A stretch of 64,000 nt of DNA from Podarcis erhardii (GCA_964252035.1 OZ176206.1); one strand, 5' to 3'; numbered from the stretch's first letter, positions 47,150-64,000 are shown. The notes: generated from the sequence alone by a model not told the origin. Translations and numbers: made by a program.

Positions 47150-50068
47150 GCGCCTGTTAAAGGAACATGAAATACAGAAGTTGGGGGGGAAACGCACTTT
47201 GAAACAGGTTCTAATGAAATCCTTAGAAAATTGGAACACAAAAGATCAGAATTAGAAGTGTTATATATGGAGAGAATAGGCAAATCCATGCTCGTTGTGA
47301 GTCAAAAGTTATATGAACATGGTAATAAACATTCCAAATGCTAGCCAGGGCTCTCAAAAGTAAGCAATTTATTTAAATAATTACTTTAAATATGGAACTT
47401 TCACTCATGACTAAAATCAGATTAGCAATATGTTTATAGTGTTTTATAAAGAGCTATATAACCCAAATAACCCTTTACCTGAAAAAAATTAAGTGAGAAG
47501 ATGTGTTATCAAACCTTTCATAAAGAAAGCACAACATTCTGCAGAAGAAATTGATCAAGCTATTAAAAAAACTGAAATACTGTATATGAGCCCTTGACCC
47601 GATGGGCTTGGCAACACATTTTTTAAGAAATACAGAGACCTACTCACACTTTATATTTGTCAACTTTATCCATCTGGCAAGAGCAATCAGGCGCTGATAC
47701 ATAGGCAGTGATCCAGAATAACTGTTCTTCTAAAGCCAGGCAGAGATAAAGCACAGGTGTGCTCATACAGGCCAATTACCTTATTGAATCAGGACCAGAT
47801 TATCTTCTTCTCAATTTTAGTTGCACATTTAAATCTAATAATTAGGAATTTAATCCATACAGACGAAACATACCTCTTGGGCATATCTTGGATCCCATAA
47901 GACTGTTCTTCTTGGATTTATGTTCATTACAAATTTACAAAGCCTTTGGTGGTTTGGAATGGTGTTATCTCTTAACATTTTGCGGACATGCCAACTAGGC
48001 AATCACCTTATTACAGCAATAGCTAAACTCCATTCAAATAATTCAGCTACTCTAAGAATTAATAACATGGACTCCTCAGCAATTGCAATCTGGAGAGGGA
48101 CAAAAAAAGGTTGTCCCTTGTGGCCACTGCTCTTCGTCTTCTCTTTTGAACCATTTGCTAATATCTTACGTCTTAATCCAGATGTAAAAGGATATTCGAG
48201 AAAGGGCGAAGAGCATCTGTTGACAATGTATGCAGATGATATTGTTGTGATGATGAAAGGCCCTAAGGGGTCAGCCTGTGCATTAAAGGAAGAATTAACA
48301 TCTTTTTGTGAAGTGGCAGGCTTAAAAATAAACACTGGAAAATCAATGATGTTTTTCAGTCTTCCACCACTGATTCAAATACACACTTGTCATATTCTTA
48401 ATACACCTATGTGCTGCTCTGCATTTGGAGACTTGGGTGTGCCAATTCTAAAAAACATGAACCATGAATCTAAACTGAATTATCCCATTATTTTAAAAAT
48501 GAACATGGACTTTAAAAAATGGAACAAATTTAACCTTTCCATTTTAGGCTCTATTGCAGCAGTACATATCATGTTAATTCCCCTTTTCTGTCCCTCTTTC
48601 AGGTCCTCCTTACTTTTCTCCAACGTCCAAATGGCAAACTAAAATTGTTTCATATTTCAAGATAAGTCTTCAAGGTTGCCCATGAAATCTTCTTTTCTTT
48701 TCTTTTTTAAATCAAAGTTGTTGGGGTTTACCAAACCTCTCGGTATACCATGACGCATTCCAATTGAGACAGCAGGCTTTCATGATTATGAAGGATGGTA
48801 AGAAATGGATCAATTTGGAAGAAAAACAAATAGCCCTAGGTCTGCTATGTGCTTTATCTTTCAAAAACCTTAAAATTATCACCCAAATGAATAACCCATA
48901 TTTACAAACTAAATTGAGGATATGGAAAAAATGGAAGTTGACTCTCCCCAGGTTGTTCACCACTCACTTCTCTGCAGACATATGCCAGTCTGAAAGCTGA
49001 TACTGATACTTTTAAAGCTAAAATAAAGAAAAGGGTAAAATTGGGTTATTTCAGACTGTGATTTTTTTTTTACAGGAGTAAGACCAGTAACTTTAAATGT
49101 ACCAAAAATGGGAATTAACTTTAAAGAGGCTTCAAATTCTACAAATTAAACATTTACTAAAGGATCTGATAGTTAAATTACATGCAACTAATTTTGAATG
49201 ATCCAAGGTGCCACTAGGTAATGGAGGCAAGGAAGTAATATCAAAATTTTATGGTTACTTAATACAGAACTAATTTGGGGACTTGTCTAGCTTAAAATCA
49301 AGATGGGAATATGATGTAAAAGTAACAATGGAAGACTCAATTTAGAAAGGCATATGCATGAAGAAACCCTTTAAGTCAGTGTCTGCGAACATTAAAGAAC
49401 TTTCACTCAAAATCTTCCACAGATGGTATAGGACTCCATCCCAACATCACATCAACTATAAGCCCCTTATGTTGGCATGGATGTGACACTAAGGGGACAA
49501 ATATACATTTTTGGTGGACTTGTTTTTGAATACAAGTTGTTTGGTCCCTGGATCACATAGAACTAACAGCACTAATAAAGGAAACAACTGAATTCACTCC
49601 ATAGCTTTTTATTTTAACAATGTTCCAAGGTACAAATAAAAATGTACTATCTAAAGAACTCATCACTTTACCAACTGTAGCAAGGCGGTCTATTGTCCAA
49701 CACTGGAAATATTTTGTGGTATAAAAACATGTACAACACTGCAATTTCAGTAAAAATTACATTTAGTTTTCAATTAATTCAAGTTGAGGCATAACCTATG
49801 GATTTTGGAGCAGTGTGGTGGGATTTTATATAGTATGTTATTAATACTAATTGAAGTAACTTGATTCCACAAGTAAATAAGAATGTTTGCCTATCGTGAG
49901 ACTGTAAGATGTCATCCTGTTTGTGGATAGAATATATCTTATTCTACTATCTTTTTACTTTAACCTTATTTATAGCATTTGTACTCCAGATGATTATGGC
50001 ATAATACCAGTTTATTAATATCACAGCAGACCTACAGTGAAAAATAACATTTATAAGAAAATAAAAAA
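47150..50068 (+). mobile_element. Decayed, 5'-truncated L1/Tx1-type LINE (ORF2 remnant plus 3' UTR)
   Basis: Frameshifted ORF2 motifs occur in order: QKLYEHGNK, SYRPITLLNQD, GTKKGCPLWPLLF, MYADD, GLKINTGKS, a C-terminal CW..C..H.WW.C knuckle (about 49470-49520) and VARRSIVQHWK. AATAAA and an A-rich end lie at 50060-50068. Confidence 0.85.
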
Positions 50069-50351: not shown

Positions 50352-53300
50352 TCACAAGAGCCCCAGATTCTTCATCGTCCGCCATCGGTCCTTGATCGCC
50401 ACAGGAGTGCGGTTCTTAAAAGGGAATGCCTGGGAAATGGCTTTCCACCTCCCTTCCCCAAACTTCTTCACGCCTTCCTTAATCCACTGAGACTCCTCTG
50501 AAGTCCAGATCTAGAAAGAAGAGGGCATAGGCTCTCATGAGCAACCATCAAGTGCTGCAAGACTTGCCCCTTGTCCCCATGACAGAACGACAGATACCCC
50601 ACCCTCTGGAGATGGTTCCATGGCTGTTGCTAACAGAGGATTGCCACTAACATGGGATGTAGCCCAGTAACTCACAGCAGGCAAATATCCAGCCCATATT
50701 TCAAGACATTAAACCCAACTTGGTGGCGCACTTAGTCCTCCTTCTGCAATATGTGGGTAATAAAAATAAAATTCTGCTTCCTTAAAGTGTGGTTGAAGAG
50801 GCCATCAAAGATAGTAGATATAATGTGCTGAGATTGCCCAGGCTTCTTTGAAACACCTGGGTATCCAAGACCCTTGATTATTTAATTAATTAGGAGAGGC
50901 CCCTTAGTCCAGTGGTTGAACATGCAGAAGATCCCAGCTTCAAACCTGTGACATCTCCAGGTAGAGCCACGAAAGAGACACCTGGCCTGGAACCCTGTAG
51001 CACAGACAATACTGAGCTAGATGGACCAGGATTCAGCATATGGCAGCTTCCTATGTTCCCATTAATGGGGATTTCATCAGTTATTTCATTTGGGAGGGGG
51101 GGTCCTCATCAACTGGCCTCCATTTAGAGGGGTCTTGTCAAGGCAGGCCTATTTCTCCCCACTGGAGTGCTCAGCTCCAGACTGAGTGTAGGCTTGGTTA
51201 CCTTCTTTTTCGAACCAAAGAGGGAAGTGTTGATGCTGCTGCTGCTTTCTTCCTTCGATTCTGAAACACAAATTCATTTACAAACTTTATGGGATGCATG
51301 GAACCACTTGGTAAGCTGGTTATTGCTACTGGCTCAGCAGTTGGGAGGTTTTACCACTACTGCACCTCATCAGAAATCCACAGTAGTGGTCAAATTCCAC
51401 CCAGCCCTTGGCATGATGTGTACAGTCAACTACTGATGGAACTATGTTAGGGTTGCCATACATCCAGGGCATTCCAGACATGTCCTCTTTTGGGGGGCCA
51501 ACAGGCCCATCCAGGGGGATTTTTACATTTTAAAGGAAATGTCCAGGGTTGTAGGGAGGGGTTATTTATTCATTTATTGCTTGGCCAACTCTACACACCA
51601 CTGCTGCCGCCAGCCCAAGCTGGGAAAAGAAGAATGTATGTGCACTTCCTTCCCTGGCTCAGGCTGTCCTCTTTTTTGCTCTTCAAGATATGGCAACTCT
51701 AAACTATGTGGCAAACAGTCATCCATGTTCACTCACAATTGAGCATCATGCAGAACAAGAAGCCAGTCTGAGGCAAAAGGCAGTAATTTTGTCAGTGCTG
51801 CTGCTGCGCACTTGGGAGTAGGTAGTCCAAATATTTTACTTTTCTGATCCAAGAGCTGTGCTCCCAAATCCCTCTGCTTACTGTATACAGGATACTAGCT
51901 GCTTACCAAAAAGTTCATCCTCATCACTCCAGACCTCCTTTTCTTCATCCCGATTTAAACAAATTAGTCTCCTCTTTGCTAATCTGAATGGAACAGAGAA
52001 ACACAAGTAAGGAAAGACCTACCCCACAAGGAGATGAGACGGGACTGAGCTGCATCAATTAATGTCGCACACAACCGGGATTATGGAGATGCTGGGTTAA
52101 GTATCAGAAAAGGAGCGAGGTTAATTTGTCACAGCAAACACACCACTGCAGAGACCTATGGCAGCTTAAATATGAGCAAATAGCTGGTGGCAGAAACACA
52201 AACCCTTATCCTTGGTACAGACGGAAGGAGGGATGGGGGAGAGAAATAACATTTTCTACCTTCTGTCTGGCAACTGAAGCTAACATTCCAGGCATCTGAC
52301 AAAGCAGAGTCCGGCACAGGTGTTTCTGTCACAATAAATTTGTTTAGCAATCTTTAATGGGGCCAGAGACCGTATTGTCAATTCTGCTATCTTTGCAATC
52401 TGAGTAATAAAAATTAAGACAAGGTATGTGAACCAGATTCTCTCGCAATCTGCTTCTACTAGCTGGGGGAGAAGATGCACAGCGATGCAACCCTACCACT
52501 GCAAACCACCTTTGCCTTCCTTGGAGCTTCTGGGCTGAGGCCTAAGGCCTTCTAATGGATTCCTTGCAAAGGTGAAAGTTGCACCAAATGCCTCATGCTG
52601 TGCCAGTTCCCCATCAGACCCCACAGCAGTCATAGCCTCTTACCTGGGATATCGGGAGGTATCATCAGGCTGGGTGGGTTTTTGGGGCTGTGCAGGCCGG
52701 ACAACCAAAGTTGCCACAGGCCTCTTGGATGGAACTCGGCAGGAAGTTGGGGGGTTCCAGCTCTCTGACCCCATAACCAATGTGCTTATGGACACTGAGC
52801 GTTCACTGGGGTGCGGCCTGGAGGCAGCACGGTTCTTCTCCATTTGGCACTTGGCTGCGTGGAAATCAGAAGCCAAACATGGCTTGGGGAAAGTCCAGTC
52901 CAACTTGTCCAGTTTTGAAAACTCTTCATCTGCATCTGGGGAATTGGACAGGATCTTGAAAGCATCCCTCAGAGTAGAAAACCCATACGAGCCCATCCTC
53001 TTAGGCGAGCATCTGCAAAATAAACATCAGAAGGTTGCTCCACAAGTTTTGCCAATTTATGTTGCTGACCTCACCCTCAAGACCTTGCTCCCCTGGCAGC
53101 AGGTGTAATTTGAGTCTGAGAGCCAGAAATTGTATGGCAAAACAGCTGCCCAGCATGGCAAAGGGAGTCAAAACTGTAAGAGGCCATAGGCTGCTAACCT
53201 GTCAGAGTCACTGGAAACTGCTGAGACAGTGGCAACAGCAACCACAGCAGGCTCTGCAGCTCCACTGGTTTCTTCTTCTGGCTTTGAAGCTGCTTGGCAC

Positions 53301-56300
53301 TCATCAACCACTTTAGCAAGCTCCAAAACAGCTCCCTTTGCCTCCATCAAAGGCTTTGCAACTGTCTCACGGCCTCTCTCCATAGACTTTGGCTGTTCTT
53401 CCACTGTATTTCTAGGCGCTGCCTCAGGCCGGGGCTCTTCCAAAGTCTCATCAGATCTTCCCACAGATTCAGGATTATCTGCTGCTGCCACCTCTGAGGT
53501 TTCTTTCACCATTTCCTCCTTGCTGGCCATTTCCAAAGGATTGAGCCTGGTCTCTATCTGATCATCCGAATCCCTTTTTGCCATCTTAAGCAGAGAATGT
53601 GAACACAGTTACTAGAGAACACTTCTCAACTTTATTTTATTTTTTCTAGTTATATACAGCAGCCATGCCCAAGCTGGTGCCCTGAAGATGCTTTACCTAC
53701 AAATCCCCTAATTGTAGGGCCTCATGATGCTGGAGCACAGCCTCATGATGCTGGAGCTGTTGGGAATTGCTAGTCCAAAACATTGTCAGGTTACAAGCTT
53801 GATATATGTCAAATGTGACATTGGAGCCCTGTGCTGTTCTGCTGTGGGGTACTTTGCTCTTCACAAAAATATTTCCCAAACACATAATAGTTTGGCCAGG
53901 GAGGCTTCTGTCTTAAGCCTCAGGTGCTGAATGTACTTTTTTGATCACAGTGTTTAGACGGCAAGAGTTCTGCTGTGGCAATGTGGGTGATATTGAAGTG
54001 CTCCAGCAACACACAGAAATATATGAAGAAAGCAAGCTGCCTTATGCCAAGCCAGACCAATGGTTCATATAGTTTCCTATCACCACACATTGAGTGACAG
54101 CGGCTCTCCAGGGTTTCAAGCAGGGGACATTCCCAGTCCTACCTAGAGATGCCAGGGATTGCACTTGGGACCTTCTGCATGCAAAGTAGATGTTCGACTA
54201 CTAAGCTATACTCCCACTACAACATCCCACATCTCAATCAAGCAGCACTCCATACCCTTGCTTACCTCTAAGAGAAAGGGCTCAGAGTCACTCAAGCAGC
54301 TTTCTAAATACAGAAGTATTCTCTGCTGGAAAGCTTTATAGGAGAAGTTCCAGATGGCTGGATGAGCGAAGTTTTTTTCTCGGATGATGCTCTGGAACAT
54401 CGACCTCATTTTCTAAGCAAGGGGAAATGTTTTTCAGTACTTGCAAGCAAATTGCAGCACAGGGCAGAGATAAAAGCAATTTTTGCAGTCATTAGAAGTT
54501 TAAACAAAACAAGCCAAACCACCAGAGCAATCTAGGTAATGTAAAAAATGCATGAAAGTAATGATGACTAGAGATGTGGACCACAATCTGTAGCAACATG
54601 GGCTGCTTGTGGATGCAATTTTTCTCATTGCGTAAGGGGGACAATAAACTCTCAAGTATTTAAGACACTCACTGAATTGGAGAATGTGGGAAGGACAAAC
54701 CATGACTCTGCATTGCAGTGAAATGACCCTATAAGAGGCACATTTCAACAACAGCAGCGACATGAACTCATACCTGCTGAAAGCTCACCTGGGAACTTGG
54801 TTCCTTTGACATGTGTTTCCTCAAGATCCTGCTGGCTTGTTCATATTCTTTGTTTTTTAGACAGGTTATAACAGCCTGGAGAAGAAAGACAAAATAATGG
54901 TTTGCAAGGAAGACTTTGGGGGACTGTTCCTAATCTAAGAAGATACTGTTCGAGAGATATCCCTCTGGCAATTTTCTAGATCTGCTTCACATTTTCAACC
55001 CAGTGTGTTTTCATTGTGTAATATTAGACCACTTATTAAAGAATTAAAAAAAAAAATCAAGTAAGGCAAGTTACTTAAAAGTCTGTAGGCTAACAACATT
55101 GAAATAATGTATGCCTCAGGAGAGTCCAGAAGCCAGCTTTTCCTGGATTGCCCCCGAAGGAAACAAGTTTTCAAAACATGCTGAGTTCCAATAAACTCAG
55201 GCACTTCTGAGGAGACATTTCTCTTTCATTTCATCCCAACATATAGGAATCGTGCCTCCTTGCTTCTATTAATTTTTGTGAACTTATTTAAAAGTCCAAT
55301 TTAAGCATGGAGAAAAATAGGCAAGAGTTAATCCTGGCATTGAATTAGCACCTTAATTAAACCCTTTCCTAAATATACTGCATTTTGAAACTCAAGACAG
55401 CTGTCCTCATACTAACTAGGCTGAGAAACAGTAATCAGTGCCTACAGAAGAGGAAATGCTAACACTTACTGCTTCCTTTATTTTATTTCTTATTTCTTCT
55501 ATTATATCAATGCCTATGTCCAATTCATTCTTCATCTTATCCAAAAGAACAAGGGCATATTCAAGAGGTGTTAACTTGGTCTTGGTATCAATGGTCCAAT
55601 CTTCTTCAATCCTAGACAGAAGCTGGATAATCCGCAGCTGAATGCCAATGCGTTTCTCTAGCACTAGGGGCCTTGCAAGCACAGCTGGAGAAGAACAAGA
55701 CAGTCAAAACAGCCACTAAGCAAAATCAGATAGTTCAGCAAACCAGGTGTAACGAGGCTTGGGTAAGGCACCAAAGCCCTGTCCCATATATTGTATCCCT
55801 GGCCATATACAGACAGACAGCTTCATCCTAACGTGCCCTTTGGCCCAGGAGTCACTTTGCATTTGCTTGTTTTTTTGTGTGTGATCTGCAATATCTTTTA
55901 GTATCTATATATACACAAACACACACTTTTTTTTTTTAGTGTCTTAATCTTTGTGGTGAGAGATCTTGCTGGAGCTCCAGTTTTGTAGGGCAGAAATGCA
56001 GTATGTACAGATTTTATTAATAATAATAATAATAATTTTTATTTATACCCCGCCCTCCCCAGCCAAGGCCGGGCTCAGGGCAGCTAACAAGCAATAATAA
56101 AAACAAGTTGAATGATTACAACTTAAAAACAAAATTAAAATACAACATTAAAATATTGAAACATTAAAATATTTATAGACACACGGAAGTAATTACTGTA
56201 AGAAAATGAATGGTAAAGTACAGTAGTTGAGTTTCTTAGAACTACACTCCAAAGGTGCTAGGCCATTCCTAATGGTTGGCTTCTGGAAACCATCACACTC

Positions 56301-57132
56301 AACTACAGGCCACACCCAAAACTCATTAAATTCAATCTCTTAATACACACATCAACATTCTCCAATTTGAAATAGATTTCACGAAGGCTCTGAAGTTTTA
56401 TTGTTATTCACGCTTTTATACTGTATTTTATGCTGTTTTTTGTTGTATCACAATTGTTTTAAATTTGTTAGCCACCCTGAGCCCGGTTTTCTGAACCGGG
56501 AAGAGCGGGGTATAAATAAAAATTTATTATTATTTCCCTTAATGTCTAAAGGCAAATGACAAACGTTCCAGGGACACAGACTGCATTATATTTTAAGTTG
56601 CTTTAGGTTCATTATTTCTTAAATGAAAACACCTAATGATTATTAAATGTAATATGTCACTGTTACTTATTTACATTTATATAAGTGGAACCAGGGCTAT
56701 TACGTGACATATTTTAATGCTTGATGTTTTAGTATGTTCTGATATGTGCTGTGAGCCGCCCAGAGTGGCTGAGGAAACCCAGCCAGATGGGCGGCGTATA
56801 ACTAATAAAATTATTATTATTAGTTATTTACACTCACGTTCCTTAGCAGGAAATACCTTTACAGTTATTTAACCCAGCGAGAATGTTCCCCAAATGCCCC
56901 TTTCGTAAAACAAACTGGTCTCCTCACCGTATATGACGTCGCGCAGCTGGCGAAAGTCCTGGCTGCGGCCGGCCCGGAAAGCCTGAAGGGCCCGGTGGGC
57001 GTAGAAGAGGATGGCCCACCGGTTCACCGCCTCCTCCAAGGCCTTTTCGCGAGCCTCCGCGGCTCCTTCGGGCGATGCAGCAGGAGACGCTCCAGGGCCG
57101 CCGCCCGCCATCTTCCCTCTCCCGCGCGCCAT
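50352..57132 (-). CDS. TERF2: Telomeric repeat-binding factor 2 (about 567 aa, 9 coding exons)
   Basis: Exons 57132-56928, 55684-55470, 54875-54789, 54412-54266, 53584-53199, 53012-52644, 51983-51907, 51260-51202 and 50510-50352 total 1704 nt. Domains seen: TRFH (LEEAVNRW...FRQLRDV, LTPLE), a RAP1-binding-like [11 protein letters not shown], a TIN2-binding-like SISTLVM and the Myb domain [21 protein letters not shown]...IKDRWRTMK. Confidence 0.95.
56019..56830. mobile_element. Three L2-type 3' tails in TERF2 intron 1 (56019-56170 minus; about 56385-56535 and 56703-56830 plus)
   Basis: Each ends in a gggcgg(g/c)gtataa.taa.aa plus (ATT)n motif preceded by gccgccc(t/a)gag-like sequence. Confidence 0.68.
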
Positions 57133-61300: not shown

Positions 61301-64000
61301 TGGAGCAAAGGAGGAGCAGCCTGCTGCTCCCATTTCACATTTATTGAACAGTGCCTGGCAAAAGAAGGCCAGGGCTTTGCTGGTACATTGTTCACAAATC
61401 CTACTGCAGGAGTTGAATGCATGCCTGATTGAGAACCTTGTACAAGTGCGGCAGCCTTGCCTCCAGATGTTGGTGGTGGACCAACAGGAGGCTGCTTCTA
61501 TCTCGTCCTCCTTCCATACCTGCCCTTTGGATCCTGCTGTTGAGCCTCTCCTGCTCTGCAGAGCTCAGCTTCTGTCCCTAGTTCATAGCAGGGCCAGTTC
61601 CCCTCTCCCAGCCGTGTTGTGCTGCGCTCCATGGCTTGTAATCATGTGCCCTTCTGGGCAGTGTGAAACTTATGCCCTTCTGAGCAGTGTGAACGTGATC
61701 TTTGGCCAATGGCTGTGTGCTTTTTGGCAGGTGCTGGCTGAGAGGGACGCCTTGGCATGCAAGCACAAGCCGGCTGTACTGGTGAAAATTGCTCCAGACC
61801 TCACGACCCAAGACAAGAAGGACATTGCCAGTGTCGTCTCTGAGGTGATGCAGGGGTGGGTGGGCAGGAGTGGTTCTGTCTGGCTGCTGCCTCAATTATG
61901 CCTCGTTGGTTTGGCCTTTTATGCCTTGTTCTAGAGCAGCTCCCTTAAGAGATCACCTTGCCCCATGTGGGCCTCTTTGATCACTTCCATCTGTGGAACT
62001 TGCACTTTTAGACCTGCCACTCTGCACTCCTCGCAAGAGCAATCTCGTGAGCATAGCAGCACTTGGAACTCCCTGCCTCTTGATACTGGGCAGGCACCCT
62101 CACCATATTGCATTTGGCAAGCGTCCCCAGACATGTAATTTAGTCACCTATATCGGCTTTAAATATTTATTGAATTTATCGTTGTTTTGAATTGAGGTGG
62201 CTTTACATACCTTTGCTTTTAGTGAACTGTGGATTTCAGCTGTGTTTTAGCTTAAGCTATATTTGTACGCTATTTGGGAGATATATAGATTTTTGATTAA
62301 GTGGTCTTATGAATTTCCTTTAAATAAGAGTGAGATTGGGGTAGGGCTAGACTTTCAGGGCCACCGCGGGCGGTGGGAAGGAGGGCAGCGCATAGGAGGA
62401 GGCTGTGGCTCTGAGGCTTGACTGGGCTCCCTTTTTCCCAGTTAGGCGTTGATGGACTGGTGGTCACCAACACCACTGTGAGCCGCCCCAGCACCTTGCG
62501 TGCAGCTCTTCGTGGTGAGGTAGGGGGTCTAAGCGGAGCTCCCCTGCGAGAGCTCTCCACTCAGCTGGTCAGCGAGATGTACTCTCTCACCCAAGGTAAG
62601 GAGACAGAGGCTGGAGGGAGGGAGGAGGGGGTGCAGGTAGGAGGGACTCCAGAATCCCTCCCACTAGCAGCCTCTTCTTGCCCCCCAGGACGGGTCCCCA
62701 TCATAGGTGTAGGTGGAGTCTCCAGCGGGCAAGATGCCTTGGACAAGATCCGTGCAGGGGCCTCCTTGGTGCAGATGTACACTGCCCTCACCTACCGTGG
62801 GCCACCTGTGGTGGGTGCTGTGAAACAGGAGCTGGAGGCTCTGTTAAGGTGAGTGCCAGGCTGGGCCCAGCTCCCAGCTTCTTGATGNNNNNNNNNNNNN
62901 NNNNNNNNNNNNNNNNNNNNNNNNNNNNNNNNNNNNNNNNNNNNNNNNNNNNNNNNNNNNNNNNNNNNNNNNNNNNNNNNNNNNNNNNNNNNNNNNNNNN
63001 NNNNNNNNNNNNNNNNNNCCCTCAATCCAGCTGTGTGTTGCAGATACATCATGATGTTACTTCAGATTCAAGCAAAGTTTTGCTGATTAGAAAGCACAGC
63101 AGAATGAGATTGCTGCCAGCATGAGATTAGGCTGTAGAGGGAGCTGAGCAGACCACATAACTGTCTGTCTCCCACCTAGGTTGTCATGCTGGGCTCCTTA
63201 TTGCATGTATGCTCTCCATTTACACTGCAAGAAGCTGATCCCTGATACTCTTTACATCAGCTTCAAGTACCTTGTCCTCCTTTGCTTGATGTTCTGTGTC
63301 TCTCGCTCTGCCTCTTACACCCATTTCTTCTCTTCCTCCCACATTCTGCTTGCCAGCCAGCCTGCCTTTCCTCCAGATCTGCTTCCTAGCCCCTGGCACA
63401 TCTCCTCTTGGAAGCCCCTGCTGCCGCCTGTTCTTCCACCTGTCCCTTATCTCCAGTCTCAAATTACCTTCCACTTCCACCAAGACAAATTACCTTATCT
63501 CCACTACAGTTCCTTTGTGTCATTTTGTGGTCTGTGGGGCTTTGTTGGCTTTGCAGCAGTTGATGTCTGGGACAACAGTAGTCCCCAAACAAGTAAAAAC
63601 AGACCTTGCTTTCTATTCTTTATATCTGTGCATCTGTTGTCTTATCCAAACAATCAAATATGTACTACGTAGAGGATAAAGTGGTCTTGATCCTGTGGGT
63701 ATTTCACATCCTTGGTTTCCTGTGACTCGCCTGCAGGTCACAAGTCCCCTCCCCACAACGTACAAGGATCTGCTCTTACAAGCATAAGCTTTTCTGGTTA
63801 CCTTTTGTAGCTGGGGAGGGAGATGGGGACCCAAGTGGGGAGCTGGTATCTTAAGCAAATAAGGACTTTGCTTGGGTTGAGGTTTTATCTTTCTAGGTGC
63901 CAAGAAAACTGCAGGGCCAGAGACAGCTAGCTGGTCTACTCACTCTGTGCTGTTTTCTCCTTTGTGCAGGGAGCAAGGATTCCAGAGCGTGCAGGATGCT
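58353..64000 (+). CDS. DHODH: Mitochondrial dihydroorotate dehydrogenase (quinone); last exon truncated by the window end
   Basis: Exons 58353-58382, 59736-59948, 60147-60346, 60495-60577, 60996-61183, 61731-61844, 62442-62595, 62689-62848 and 63970 to window end. Motifs include [15 protein letters not shown], the catalytic NVSSPNT, KIAPDL and GGLSG, plus [10 protein letters not shown]...[11 protein letters not shown]. Confidence 0.97.
59310..59482. mobile_element. Tc1/mariner-type MITE, internally shorter relative of 18605-18867, in DHODH intron 1
   Basis: TIRs taccgtatttttcgctctataac / gttatggtgcaaaaaatacggta, and a shared subterminal cagacatttccccttacttt. Confidence 0.8.
62888..63018. other. 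Assembly gap (131 N) in DHODH intron 8
   Basis: Run of N. Confidence 1.

What the first reader, a model, noticed from the sequence alone, without database searches (positions are those of the whole stretch)
55470..55684. TERF2 TRFH: two ancestral exons fused, four codons lost, and the F120 docking residue replaced by Ile
Seen: one 215-nt exon reads ...[22 protein letters not shown]...KIKEA with no intron. Established (from recall): human TRF2 encodes this as two exons (96+131=227 nt) reading SRIEEGENLDCSF120DMEAELTPLE, and F120 is the key TRFH residue for binding [Y/F/H]xLxP motifs of Apollo, SLX4 and other partners. Here GENL (exactly 12 nt) is missing at the former intron position, C118 is W and F120 is I. 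Inference: imprecise intron loss remodelled the peptide-docking loop, so lizard TRF2 may recruit accessory factors differently.
Basis: partly seen in the sequence, partly recalled or inferred. Interest (0 to 1): 0.7.

Follow-up and report, generated by a model that had tools for sequence, protein, structure and literature searches.

The report
Squamate TRF2 docking loop remodelled
All lizards and snakes examined lack four residues and the key phenylalanine of the partner-docking loop of the telomere protein TRF2, while the fused exon seen in this wall lizard comes from a later, exact intron loss that did not cause that change.

Summary
Window 55470-55684 (minus strand) is one 215-nt TERF2 exon with AG/GT splice sites. 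RNA of a congener splices it as a single block, and DNA runs from four studies hold it.

It is four codons shorter than in other amniotes. Trp replaces C118 and Ile replaces F120. Tuatara, turtles, crocodilians, birds and mammals all keep GENLDC[ST]FD (144 sequences). All 50 squamate sequences have the short loop, so the change is derived and squamate-wide.

The proposed mechanism, imprecise intron loss, is not supported. Gecko, cordylid, monitor, agamid and rattlesnake already lack GENL but keep the intron, as exons of 84+131 nt. Turtle, kiwi and colugo have 96+131 nt. The 12 nt were therefore lost from the 3' end of exon 2 on the squamate stem. The likeliest cause is a splice-donor shift onto the Gly-Glu codons (GGT GAG).

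The intron was removed exactly (84+131=215) much later, before lacertids and amphisbaenians split.

The TRFH fold is kept, and fixed squamate changes cluster at residues 93-138. Whether Apollo or PNUTS docking is altered, lost or compensated by the new Trp was not tested. I found no report of this in the searched literature.

The parts
55470..55684 (-). TERF2 exon 2. A single 215-nt exon that equals ancestral exons 2 and 3. It encodes TRFH helix 3, the docking loop and helix 4.
   Evidence: ORF and splice sites. Alignment to human TRF2 TRFH chains. RNA joints at both ends, none inside.
55600..55601 (-). Former intron position, inside the Asp codon G|AT (55601-55599). The upstream 84 nt correspond to the squamate exon 2 and the downstream 131 nt to exon 3.
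   Evidence: Junction comparison with Gekko, Crotalus, Hemicordylus, Varanus and Pogona (84+131 nt) and with Rhineura (215 nt).
55587..55601 (-). Codons GAT TGG ACC ATT GAT = D-W-T-I-D. This is the remodelled docking loop. W aligns with human C118 and I with F120. GENL (human 113-116) would lie immediately upstream.
55685..55686 (-). Acceptor AG of intron 1.
   Evidence: RNA joint 55684->56928.
55464..55469 (-). Donor GTAAGT of the next intron.
   Evidence: RNA joint 54874/5->55469/70.
56928..57132 (-). TERF2 exon 1 coding part, from the start codon ([12 protein letters not shown]...) to ...FRQLRDVIY plus 1 nt.
   Evidence: tblastn with the P. lilfordi TRF2. RNA joint at 56928.
54789..54875 (-). 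TERF2 exon 3 (87 nt; [29 protein letters not shown]).
   Evidence: RNA joints on both sides.
54266..54412 (-). TERF2 exon 4 (end of the TRFH domain, ...SDSEPFLLE).
   Evidence: RNA joint at 54412 and RNA contig pieces 54266-54414.
51903..51985 (-). Exon carrying the acidic, Trp-centred iDDR-like motif ([14 protein letters not shown]). The boundaries are approximate.
   Evidence: ORF and tblastn. Motif as defined in PMC8653790.
50352..50510 (-). Last exon: Myb/SANT DNA-binding domain and stop codon.
   Evidence: PF00249 on the orthologue.

Best explanation
This is the genuine, expressed TERF2 gene of a Podarcis wall lizard. Its 215-nt exon 2 is the product of two separate events.

Step 1 took place on the stem of Squamata, after the split from tuatara and before geckos diverged. 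The last 12 nt of ancestral exon 2 (codons Gly-Glu-Asn-Leu, human 113-116) dropped out of the mRNA. The most likely cause is that the Gly-Glu codons GGT GAG became the new splice donor G|GTGAG. That donor lies 12 nt upstream of the old one, in the same phase, and re-forms the split Asp codon G|AT. In the same interval TGC(C118) became TGG(W) and TTT(F120) became ATT(I), later T in geckos and V or M in a few lineages.

Step 2 came much later, before lacertids and amphisbaenians split. The intron was excised exactly (84+131=215 nt) without touching the protein.

Functional reading (inferred, not shown). The loop between TRFH helices 3 and 4, which in mammals docks Y/H-x-L-x-P peptides around F120, was rebuilt in squamates rather than abandoned. 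The new [DN]-W-x-[ITV]-D loop has been held for the whole squamate radiation. It probably still serves as a docking surface, with the invariant Trp supplying the aromatic contact and with changed peptide specificity.
For: Shown:
- The exon, its splice sites and its expression.
- It is not an assembly error.
- Non-squamate amniotes have exons of 96+131 nt ending ...GAG GAG GG(T/G) GAG AAC CTN G|gt. This holds for Chelonia L001, Apteryx L002 and Galeopterus L003.
- Five squamates keep the intron with exons of 84+131 nt and the donor G|GTGA(G/C) directly after the EE codons. These are Gekko L004, Crotalus L005, Hemicordylus L006, Varanus L007 and Pogona L008.
- Rhineura L009 and the lacertid TERF2-like paralogue L010 have the same single 215-nt exon as the window.
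- The tuatara protein keeps GENLDCTFD.
- 144 non-squamate sequences have GENLDC[ST]FD and one has GQNLDCTFD. All 50 squamate sequences have the short loop, with W in 49 and F only in a paralogue.
- The TRFH core is 182 residues in squamates and 186 elsewhere, so this is the only indel.
- The fold is kept: AF2 pLDDT 84.5 and TM 0.85-0.90 to human TRF2 TRFH crystal structures.
- 25 alignment columns share no residue between squamates and other amniotes. Fifteen of them fall in human residues 93-138 (hypergeometric p=2e-5, or p=1e-3 without the gap columns).
- The squamate stem is the longest internal branch of the TRFH tree, 0.43-0.45 changes per site.

From the literature:
- F120A abolishes SLX4 and Apollo binding (PMC4334113; PMC10497418).
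- Cys160 (=C118) lies next to the Pro of the bound peptide (bioRxiv 10.1101/2023.02.01.526591).
- The Apollo and PNUTS motifs are present in amniotes (PMC8653790).
- The iDDR-like motif is retained in the window. In mouse the iDDR makes telomeres depend on TRF2-bound Apollo.
Against: - The donor-shift mechanism is not proven. GTGAG is also simply the generic donor consensus. A 12-bp genomic deletion by slippage between the two GGT triplets that flank it in the kiwi-like sequence would give the same mRNA. Intron starts beyond GTGAG show no clear remnant of AAC CTN G.
- Teiid, dibamid and skink loci were not obtained, so the date of the intron loss is bracketed by only a few taxa.
- No binding data, no complex model and no squamate Apollo or PNUTS sequences could be examined, so the functional reading is inference only.
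- Geckos carry a polar Thr at position 120, which fits a relaxed or lost pocket as well as a rebuilt one.
- Squamates evolve fast genome-wide, so the long stem branch is not specific evidence.
- One Anolis carolinensis-like model (P0052) has four extra residues (DENK) at this very site and is unexplained.
Confidence: 0.8

Rival explanations
1. A single imprecise intron loss in the lizard lineage removed the intron together with 12 nt of flanking exon, and so created the short loop.
For: In the window alone the missing 12 nt abut the former intron position, so the inference was reasonable from one sequence.
Against: Gekko, Hemicordylus, Varanus, Pogona and Crotalus have the short loop with the intron still present (84+131 nt). 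The fused exon equals exactly 84+131.
Confidence: 0.02
2. Variant of step 1. The 12 nt were removed from the genome by replication slippage between the two GGT triplets (GAG G[GT GAG AAC CTA G]GT), leaving the old donor in place. No splice-site shift was involved.
For: The kiwi sequence shows the direct GGT...GGT repeat exactly 12 nt apart. No recognisable remnant of AAC CTN G follows GTGAG in squamate introns.
Against: All five squamate donors read GTGA(G/C), which matches the ancestral Gly-Glu codons. None resembles the old donors GTACGA, GTGGGT or GTATGG of turtle, kiwi and colugo. Selection for a consensus donor could, however, produce the same result.
Confidence: 0.3
3. Functional rival A. 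The docking site was lost in squamates. The loop is conserved only for folding, and Apollo and PNUTS reach telomeres by another route or are dispensable there.
For: F120A alone abolishes partner binding in mammals. Squamates changed F120 and C118 and shortened the loop. Geckos have Thr at position 120.
Against: W is invariant and position 120 is restricted to I/V/T/M across the squamate radiation. Fixed changes cluster around the groove, which looks like coordinated remodelling. The iDDR-like motif is retained, and in mouse the iDDR makes Apollo recruitment necessary.
Confidence: 0.25
4. Functional rival B. The change is neutral. Ile and Trp keep the pocket hydrophobic, and binding of YxLxP partners is essentially unchanged.
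For: Ile is a conservative hydrophobic replacement. The fold is unchanged. Squamates evolve fast in general.
Against: The motif GENLDC[ST]FD is invariant in 144 non-squamate sequences spanning the amniote crown (one further sequence has GQNL), which argues for strong constraint on exactly these residues. A 4-residue loop deletion next to the contact residues is unlikely to be silent.
Confidence: 0.2
5. Artefact, pseudogene or retrocopy. The intronless junction reflects a processed copy or a mis-assembly rather than the functional gene.
For: None beyond the missing intron.
Against: The other introns are present and spliced. Synteny NIP7-TMED6-TERF2-DHODH is kept. The reading frame is open and the TRF, RBM and Myb domains are present. 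Independent DNA runs hold the exon. The same structure occurs in Rhineura.
Confidence: 0.01

Closest known systems
Mammalian TRF2 TRFH docking site around F120 (F162 in the long numbering), which binds Y/H-x-L-x-P motifs of Apollo, PNUTS, NBS1, MCPH1 and SLX4
   Same: Orthologous gene and the same TRFH fold (TM 0.85-0.90, 53-55% identity). Same helix 3 - loop - helix 4 position, and the same downstream 131-nt coding block.
   Different: The loop is 4 residues shorter. F120 is I (T, V or M in some squamates) and C118 is W. Eleven further fixed substitutions lie in residues 93-138. Binding was not tested.
TRF1 TRFH docking site around F142, which binds the TIN2 FxLxP motif
   Same: Paralogous pocket with a Phe at the equivalent place (PMC8653790). 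This shows that the Phe predates the TRF1/TRF2 duplication.
   Different: A different paralogue. Squamate TRF1 was not examined here.
Exact intron loss, by reverse-transcript-mediated recombination or by microhomology deletion
   Same: The intron is removed to the nucleotide, with no change in the coding sequence relative to intron-bearing sister lineages (84+131=215). Neighbouring introns are kept.
   Different: It is a single 5'-proximal intron. Two-nucleotide AG microhomology at both ends (GAAG|GT ... TAG|AT) would also allow a genomic deletion. The mechanism was not resolved.
Splice-donor shift onto a cryptic in-frame GT (tandem donor or 'intron sliding' type events)
   Same: The new donor lies 12 nt upstream, in the same phase, and overlaps the ancestral GGT GAG codons.
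   Different: It is fixed in a whole order rather than being an alternative isoform. None of the 147 non-squamate sequences seen shows the short form.

Membership tests
TERF2 (TRF2) orthologue | TRFH dimerisation and docking domain (Pfam PF08558, TRFH fold) | tested here: met
   PF08558 on Podarcis TRF2 (55 bits, cut-off 25). AF2 model matches human TRF2 TRFH crystal structures better than TRF1 (TM 0.85-0.90 against 0.63-0.78).
TERF2 (TRF2) orthologue | C-terminal Myb/SANT telomeric DNA-binding domain | tested here: met
   PF00249. Window exon 50510-50352 is 100% identical to P. lilfordi TRF2.
TERF2 (TRF2) orthologue | RAP1-binding motif and iDDR-like acidic Trp motif in the hinge | tested here: met
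   PF16772 on P0001 and P0019. [14 protein letters not shown] is read in the window. Motif definition from PMC8653790.
TERF2 (TRF2) orthologue | Conserved synteny with NIP7 and TMED6 | tested here: met
   NIP7-like and TMED6-like ORFs lie downstream in the window. NIP7 is next to TERF2 in the colugo locus.
Canonical F120-type TRFH docking site | Phe at position 120 | tested here: not met
   Ile in the window. I, T, V or M in all 50 squamate sequences. F in all 147 non-squamate sequences.
Canonical F120-type TRFH docking site | Loop G-E-N-L-D-C-x-F-D of ancestral length, with Cys118 beside the peptide's Pro | tested here: not met
   GENL is absent and C is W. Role of Cys160 (=C118) from bioRxiv 10.1101/2023.02.01.526591.
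Canonical F120-type TRFH docking site | Binds Y/H-x-L-x-P peptides of Apollo or PNUTS | not testable with these tools
   No squamate Apollo or PNUTS sequence could be fetched, because no query was available by reference. No complex prediction or binding assay is on offer.
Exact intron loss | The fused exon equals the sum of the flanking exons of intron-bearing relatives, and the other introns are retained | tested here: met
   84+131=215. Introns 1, 2 and 3 of the window gene are spliced in RNA.
Splice-donor shift | The new donor coincides with ancestral coding nucleotides, and the old donor plus the skipped nucleotides become intronic | tested here: inconclusive
   All squamate donors are G|GTGA(G/C), matching GGT GAG of kiwi.

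The most novel reading that the evidence does not exclude
Squamates (over 11,000 species) rewired TRF2's partner docking about 200-250 million years ago. The canonical F120 pocket no longer exists, and a Trp-centred, shortened loop recruits Apollo and/or PNUTS through a co-evolved motif, or recruits a different set of factors. If so, leading-end telomere processing in lizards and snakes uses an interface distinct from that of every other amniote.
Probability: 0.3. Interest if true: 0.75.

Novelty: new variant of a known kind. Interest (0 to 1): 0.55.

Why it matters
F120 is the single residue used throughout the mammalian literature to uncouple TRF2 from Apollo and the other TRFH clients. Its motif, GENLDC[ST]FD, is invariant from tuatara to mammals in the sequences seen here. 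An entire order that replaced it gives a natural experiment on how the TRFH docking code can change.

The case yields directly testable swap mutants and a co-evolution test on squamate Apollo and PNUTS.

It is also a clean textbook example that separates three events often conflated from a single genome: a probable splice-donor shift that deleted four codons, a much later exact intron loss, and a lineage-specific gene duplication.

For annotation, homology-driven gene models read into this intron or add residues here (the Varanus and Anolis models), so squamate TERF2 models need RNA support.

Tried and rejected
- Pfam on the 71-residue exon alone gave nothing. The full orthologue was needed.
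- Two locus look-ups failed because only the longest isoform is indexed (Tiliqua X2 and Rhineura X3). Rhineura X1 was recovered through cluster members.
- Chen et al. 2008 (the TRFH-peptide structures) is not held, and the supplements of Myler et al. 2021 are not held. Contact residues other than F120 and C118, and their squamate Apollo alignments, could therefore not be checked. My statement that helices 3 and 4 and the loop between them form the peptide groove rests on recall.
- The scan's earlier notes had nothing on TERF2, Apollo or shelterin. The one nearby note, a hammerhead in NIP7, is unrelated.
- Squamate Apollo and PNUTS could not be searched. The length rule of the word search needs a full-length query by reference, and none was available.
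- Amphibian and fish TRF2 were not retrieved, and the third word search was left unused. Polarity within amniotes is already fixed by tuatara, turtles, archosaurs and mammals, and by the paralogous F142 of TRF1.
- The model's coordinates are not exposed, so side-chain geometry of W and I could not be measured.
- No human contig was fetched or compared. The human state came only from PDB protein chains and from papers.
- The N run at 62888-63018 was left alone.

Full report
**What is in the window**

TERF2 lies on the minus strand, between DHODH (plus strand, from about 59.7 kb) and TMED6 and NIP7. The flagged stretch 55684..55470 is one open exon of 215 nt. It has an AG acceptor (55686-55685) and a GTAAGT donor (55469-55464), enters in phase 1 and leaves in phase 0.

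It encodes (A)[41 protein letters not shown]...KIKEA. phmmer against PDB chains aligns it end to end with the human TRF2 TRFH domain (E=2e-7). There is one 4-residue gap after SRIEE. This puts W opposite C118 and I opposite F120.

**Is it real?**

Fourteen DNA runs, under five organism labels and from four studies, hold every sampled 31-mer of the exon.

RNA reads and RNA contigs of a congener give three joints: 55684->56928, 54874/5->55469/70 and 54412->54789. All have GT..AG ends on the minus strand. There is no joint, gap or indel inside the exon, and contig pieces span 55469-55684 without gaps. The two fixed differences in that RNA (55513 and 55485) turn G57 into D and N66 into K, exactly the residues of the P. 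muralis protein P0001. The RNA therefore most likely comes from that species.

The window gene has 9 coding exons and an open frame, and its products match Podarcis TRF2. The Podarcis orthologues carry the TRF, RAP1-binding and Myb Pfam domains.

**Polarity**

A search of 1.8 billion representative proteins, followed by two word searches, gave 204 TRF2 sequences.

- Non-squamates. 144 sequences carry GENLDC[ST]FD exactly. They come from tuatara, 20+ turtles, 3 crocodilians, many birds and many mammals. One gannet isoform has GQNL. Two turtle isoforms skip the 96-nt exon.
- Squamates. All 50 sequences lack the four residues. They cover geckos, skinks, a cordylid, lacertids, an amphisbaenian, a teiid, a monitor, an anguid, iguanians and snakes. 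They read [DN]-W-x-[I/T/V/M]-[DN]. W is present in all but one, a lacertid paralogue with F.
- The tuatara reads SRIAEGENLDCTFD.
- The TRFH core is 182 residues in squamates and 186 elsewhere, so this is its only indel.

The state in the window is therefore derived and diagnostic of Squamata as a whole. It arose after the split from tuatara and before crown squamates diverged. From general knowledge, not tested here, that is roughly 250 to 200 million years ago.

**Gene structure**

I fetched TERF2 loci of ten species and located the junctions.

| Group | Species | Exon structure | Sequence at the junction |
|---|---|---|---|
| Non-squamates | turtle, kiwi, colugo | 96+131 nt, phase-1 intron after GENL | ...GAG GAG GG(T/G) GAG AAC CTN G\|gt |
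| Squamates with the intron | Gekko, Hemicordylus, Varanus, Pogona, Crotalus | 84+131 nt | ...GAA GA(A/G) (G/A)\|GTGA(G/C) |
| Fused exon | Podarcis window, Rhineura, lacertid TERF2-like paralogue | 215 nt = 84+131 | ...GAA GAA GAT TGG (paralogue ...GAT GAA GAT TTT) |

In every species the downstream part begins AT/AC TG(C/G). In the intron-bearing squamates the donor follows the EE codons directly.

The four-codon loss therefore predates the intron loss, and the intron loss was exact.

The intron loss is bracketed between the Lacertoidea-Toxicofera split and the lacertid-amphisbaenian split. Teiids could not be checked.

**How the 12 nt were lost**

In kiwi the Gly-Glu codons read GGT GAG. 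The sequence GAG G|GTGAGA is already as good a match to the donor consensus as the real donor TAG G|GTGGGT. It lies exactly 12 nt upstream, in the same phase, behind the same G, so the split Asp codon G|AT is re-formed.

Every intron-bearing squamate uses precisely this position, and its intron starts with GTGA(G/C). I therefore favour a splice-donor shift, by about 2:1.

The rival is a 12-bp slippage deletion between the two GGT triplets. It cannot be excluded, because GTGAG is also the generic donor consensus and nothing recognisable follows it.

C118W (TGC->TGG) and F120I (TTT->ATT) are single-nucleotide changes.

**Context and function**

The AF2 model of the Podarcis TRFH is confident (pLDDT 84.5). 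It superposes on human TRF2 TRFH-peptide complexes at TM 0.85-0.90. The loop between helices 3 and 4 spans model residues 67-78.

Of 25 alignment columns with no residue shared between squamates and other amniotes, 15 lie in human residues 93-138, that is helix 3, the loop and helix 4 (p=2e-5, or p=1e-3 without the gap columns). The squamate stem is the longest internal branch of the TRFH tree, although squamates are fast-evolving in general.

From the literature:
- F120A abolishes Apollo and SLX4 binding and causes leading-end telomere fusions (PMC4334113; PMC10497418).
- Cys160 (=C118) sits next to the Pro of the bound peptide (bioRxiv 10.1101/2023.02.01.526591).
- Only Apollo and PNUTS carry the motif across amniotes. 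SLX4 gained it in haplorrhine primates (PMC8653790).

The window keeps the iDDR-like motif, which in mouse makes TRF2-bound Apollo necessary.

The new loop has been conserved for the whole squamate radiation, and the changes cluster around the groove. My best reading is a rebuilt docking surface that is still used, with altered specificity and with Trp as the new aromatic contact. Loss of docking and neutral change remain live rivals, and nothing here tests binding.

**Novelty**

Full-text searches found no paper noting a squamate exception at F120/F162. Myler et al. 2021 describe the site as present in vertebrates. This is a new variant of a known system and of moderate interest. It would become high interest if squamate Apollo or PNUTS motifs prove to have co-evolved.

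**Constraints observed**

No human contig was fetched or compared. The mammalian gene structure was taken from a colugo. The N run in the window was not touched.

Noticed in passing
L010 (Zootoca vivipara, other chromosome); also proteins P0002 (Podarcis lilfordi) and P0090 (Lacerta agilis): Lacertids carry a second gene, TERF2-like. It keeps the other introns, so it is a DNA-level duplicate. It shares the fused 215-nt-type exon and has the loop DFTID (Zootoca) or NWTID (P. lilfordi). The Zootoca product has no hit to the RAP1-binding motif PF16772. I did not check whether the window's genome also has it.
   Followed up: partly
protein P0052 (Anolis carolinensis-like, MetaClust) against P0009 (RefSeq isoform X2): One Anolis model reads SRIEE-DENK-DWTVD. 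That is four extra residues at exactly the site where GENL was lost. The RefSeq isoform lacks them. It could be a gene-model artefact, a tandem splice site or a real remnant. The locus could not be fetched.
   Followed up: no
proteins P0010 and P0032 (Varanus komodoensis, UniRef): Homology-driven models read through the squamate donor into the intron (SRIEEGECGEP...) and skip DWTIDTK. The RefSeq-type model P0023 and the locus L007 show the normal 84+131 structure.
   Followed up: yes
window 55987-56208, 56320-56541, 56653-56874 (TERF2 intron 1): Summed contig depth reaches 10^4-10^6 in a DNA run, with many partial reads in RNA. This indicates very high-copy interspersed repeats with an AT-rich or (TTA)n tail.
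   Followed up: no
window 47920-48642 (+): A 240-aa ORF with a reverse-transcriptase-like YADD motif lies between TMED6 and TERF2. It is probably a LINE fragment.
   Followed up: no
protein P0005 (Sceloporus undulatus, named 'TMED6 isoform X2', 747 aa): The RefSeq model joins a TMED6 GOLD domain (PF01105) to the TERF2 TRFH and RBM. It looks like a read-through or merged annotation of the two neighbouring genes.
   Followed up: no
proteins P0136 and P0137 (Caretta and Dermochelys isoforms): These turtle isoforms skip the 96-nt exon 2 in frame (...RDVMQ|DCTFD...). This removes helix 3 of the TRFH while keeping F120.
   Followed up: no
alignment A3, human residues 93, 100, 138, 196, 210, 223: Several other squamate-fixed, non-conservative changes occur in the TRFH: K93L, L100Q, L138K, L196Q, R/T210W and Q223L. 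Together they suggest a broader surface remodelling on the squamate stem.
   Followed up: partly
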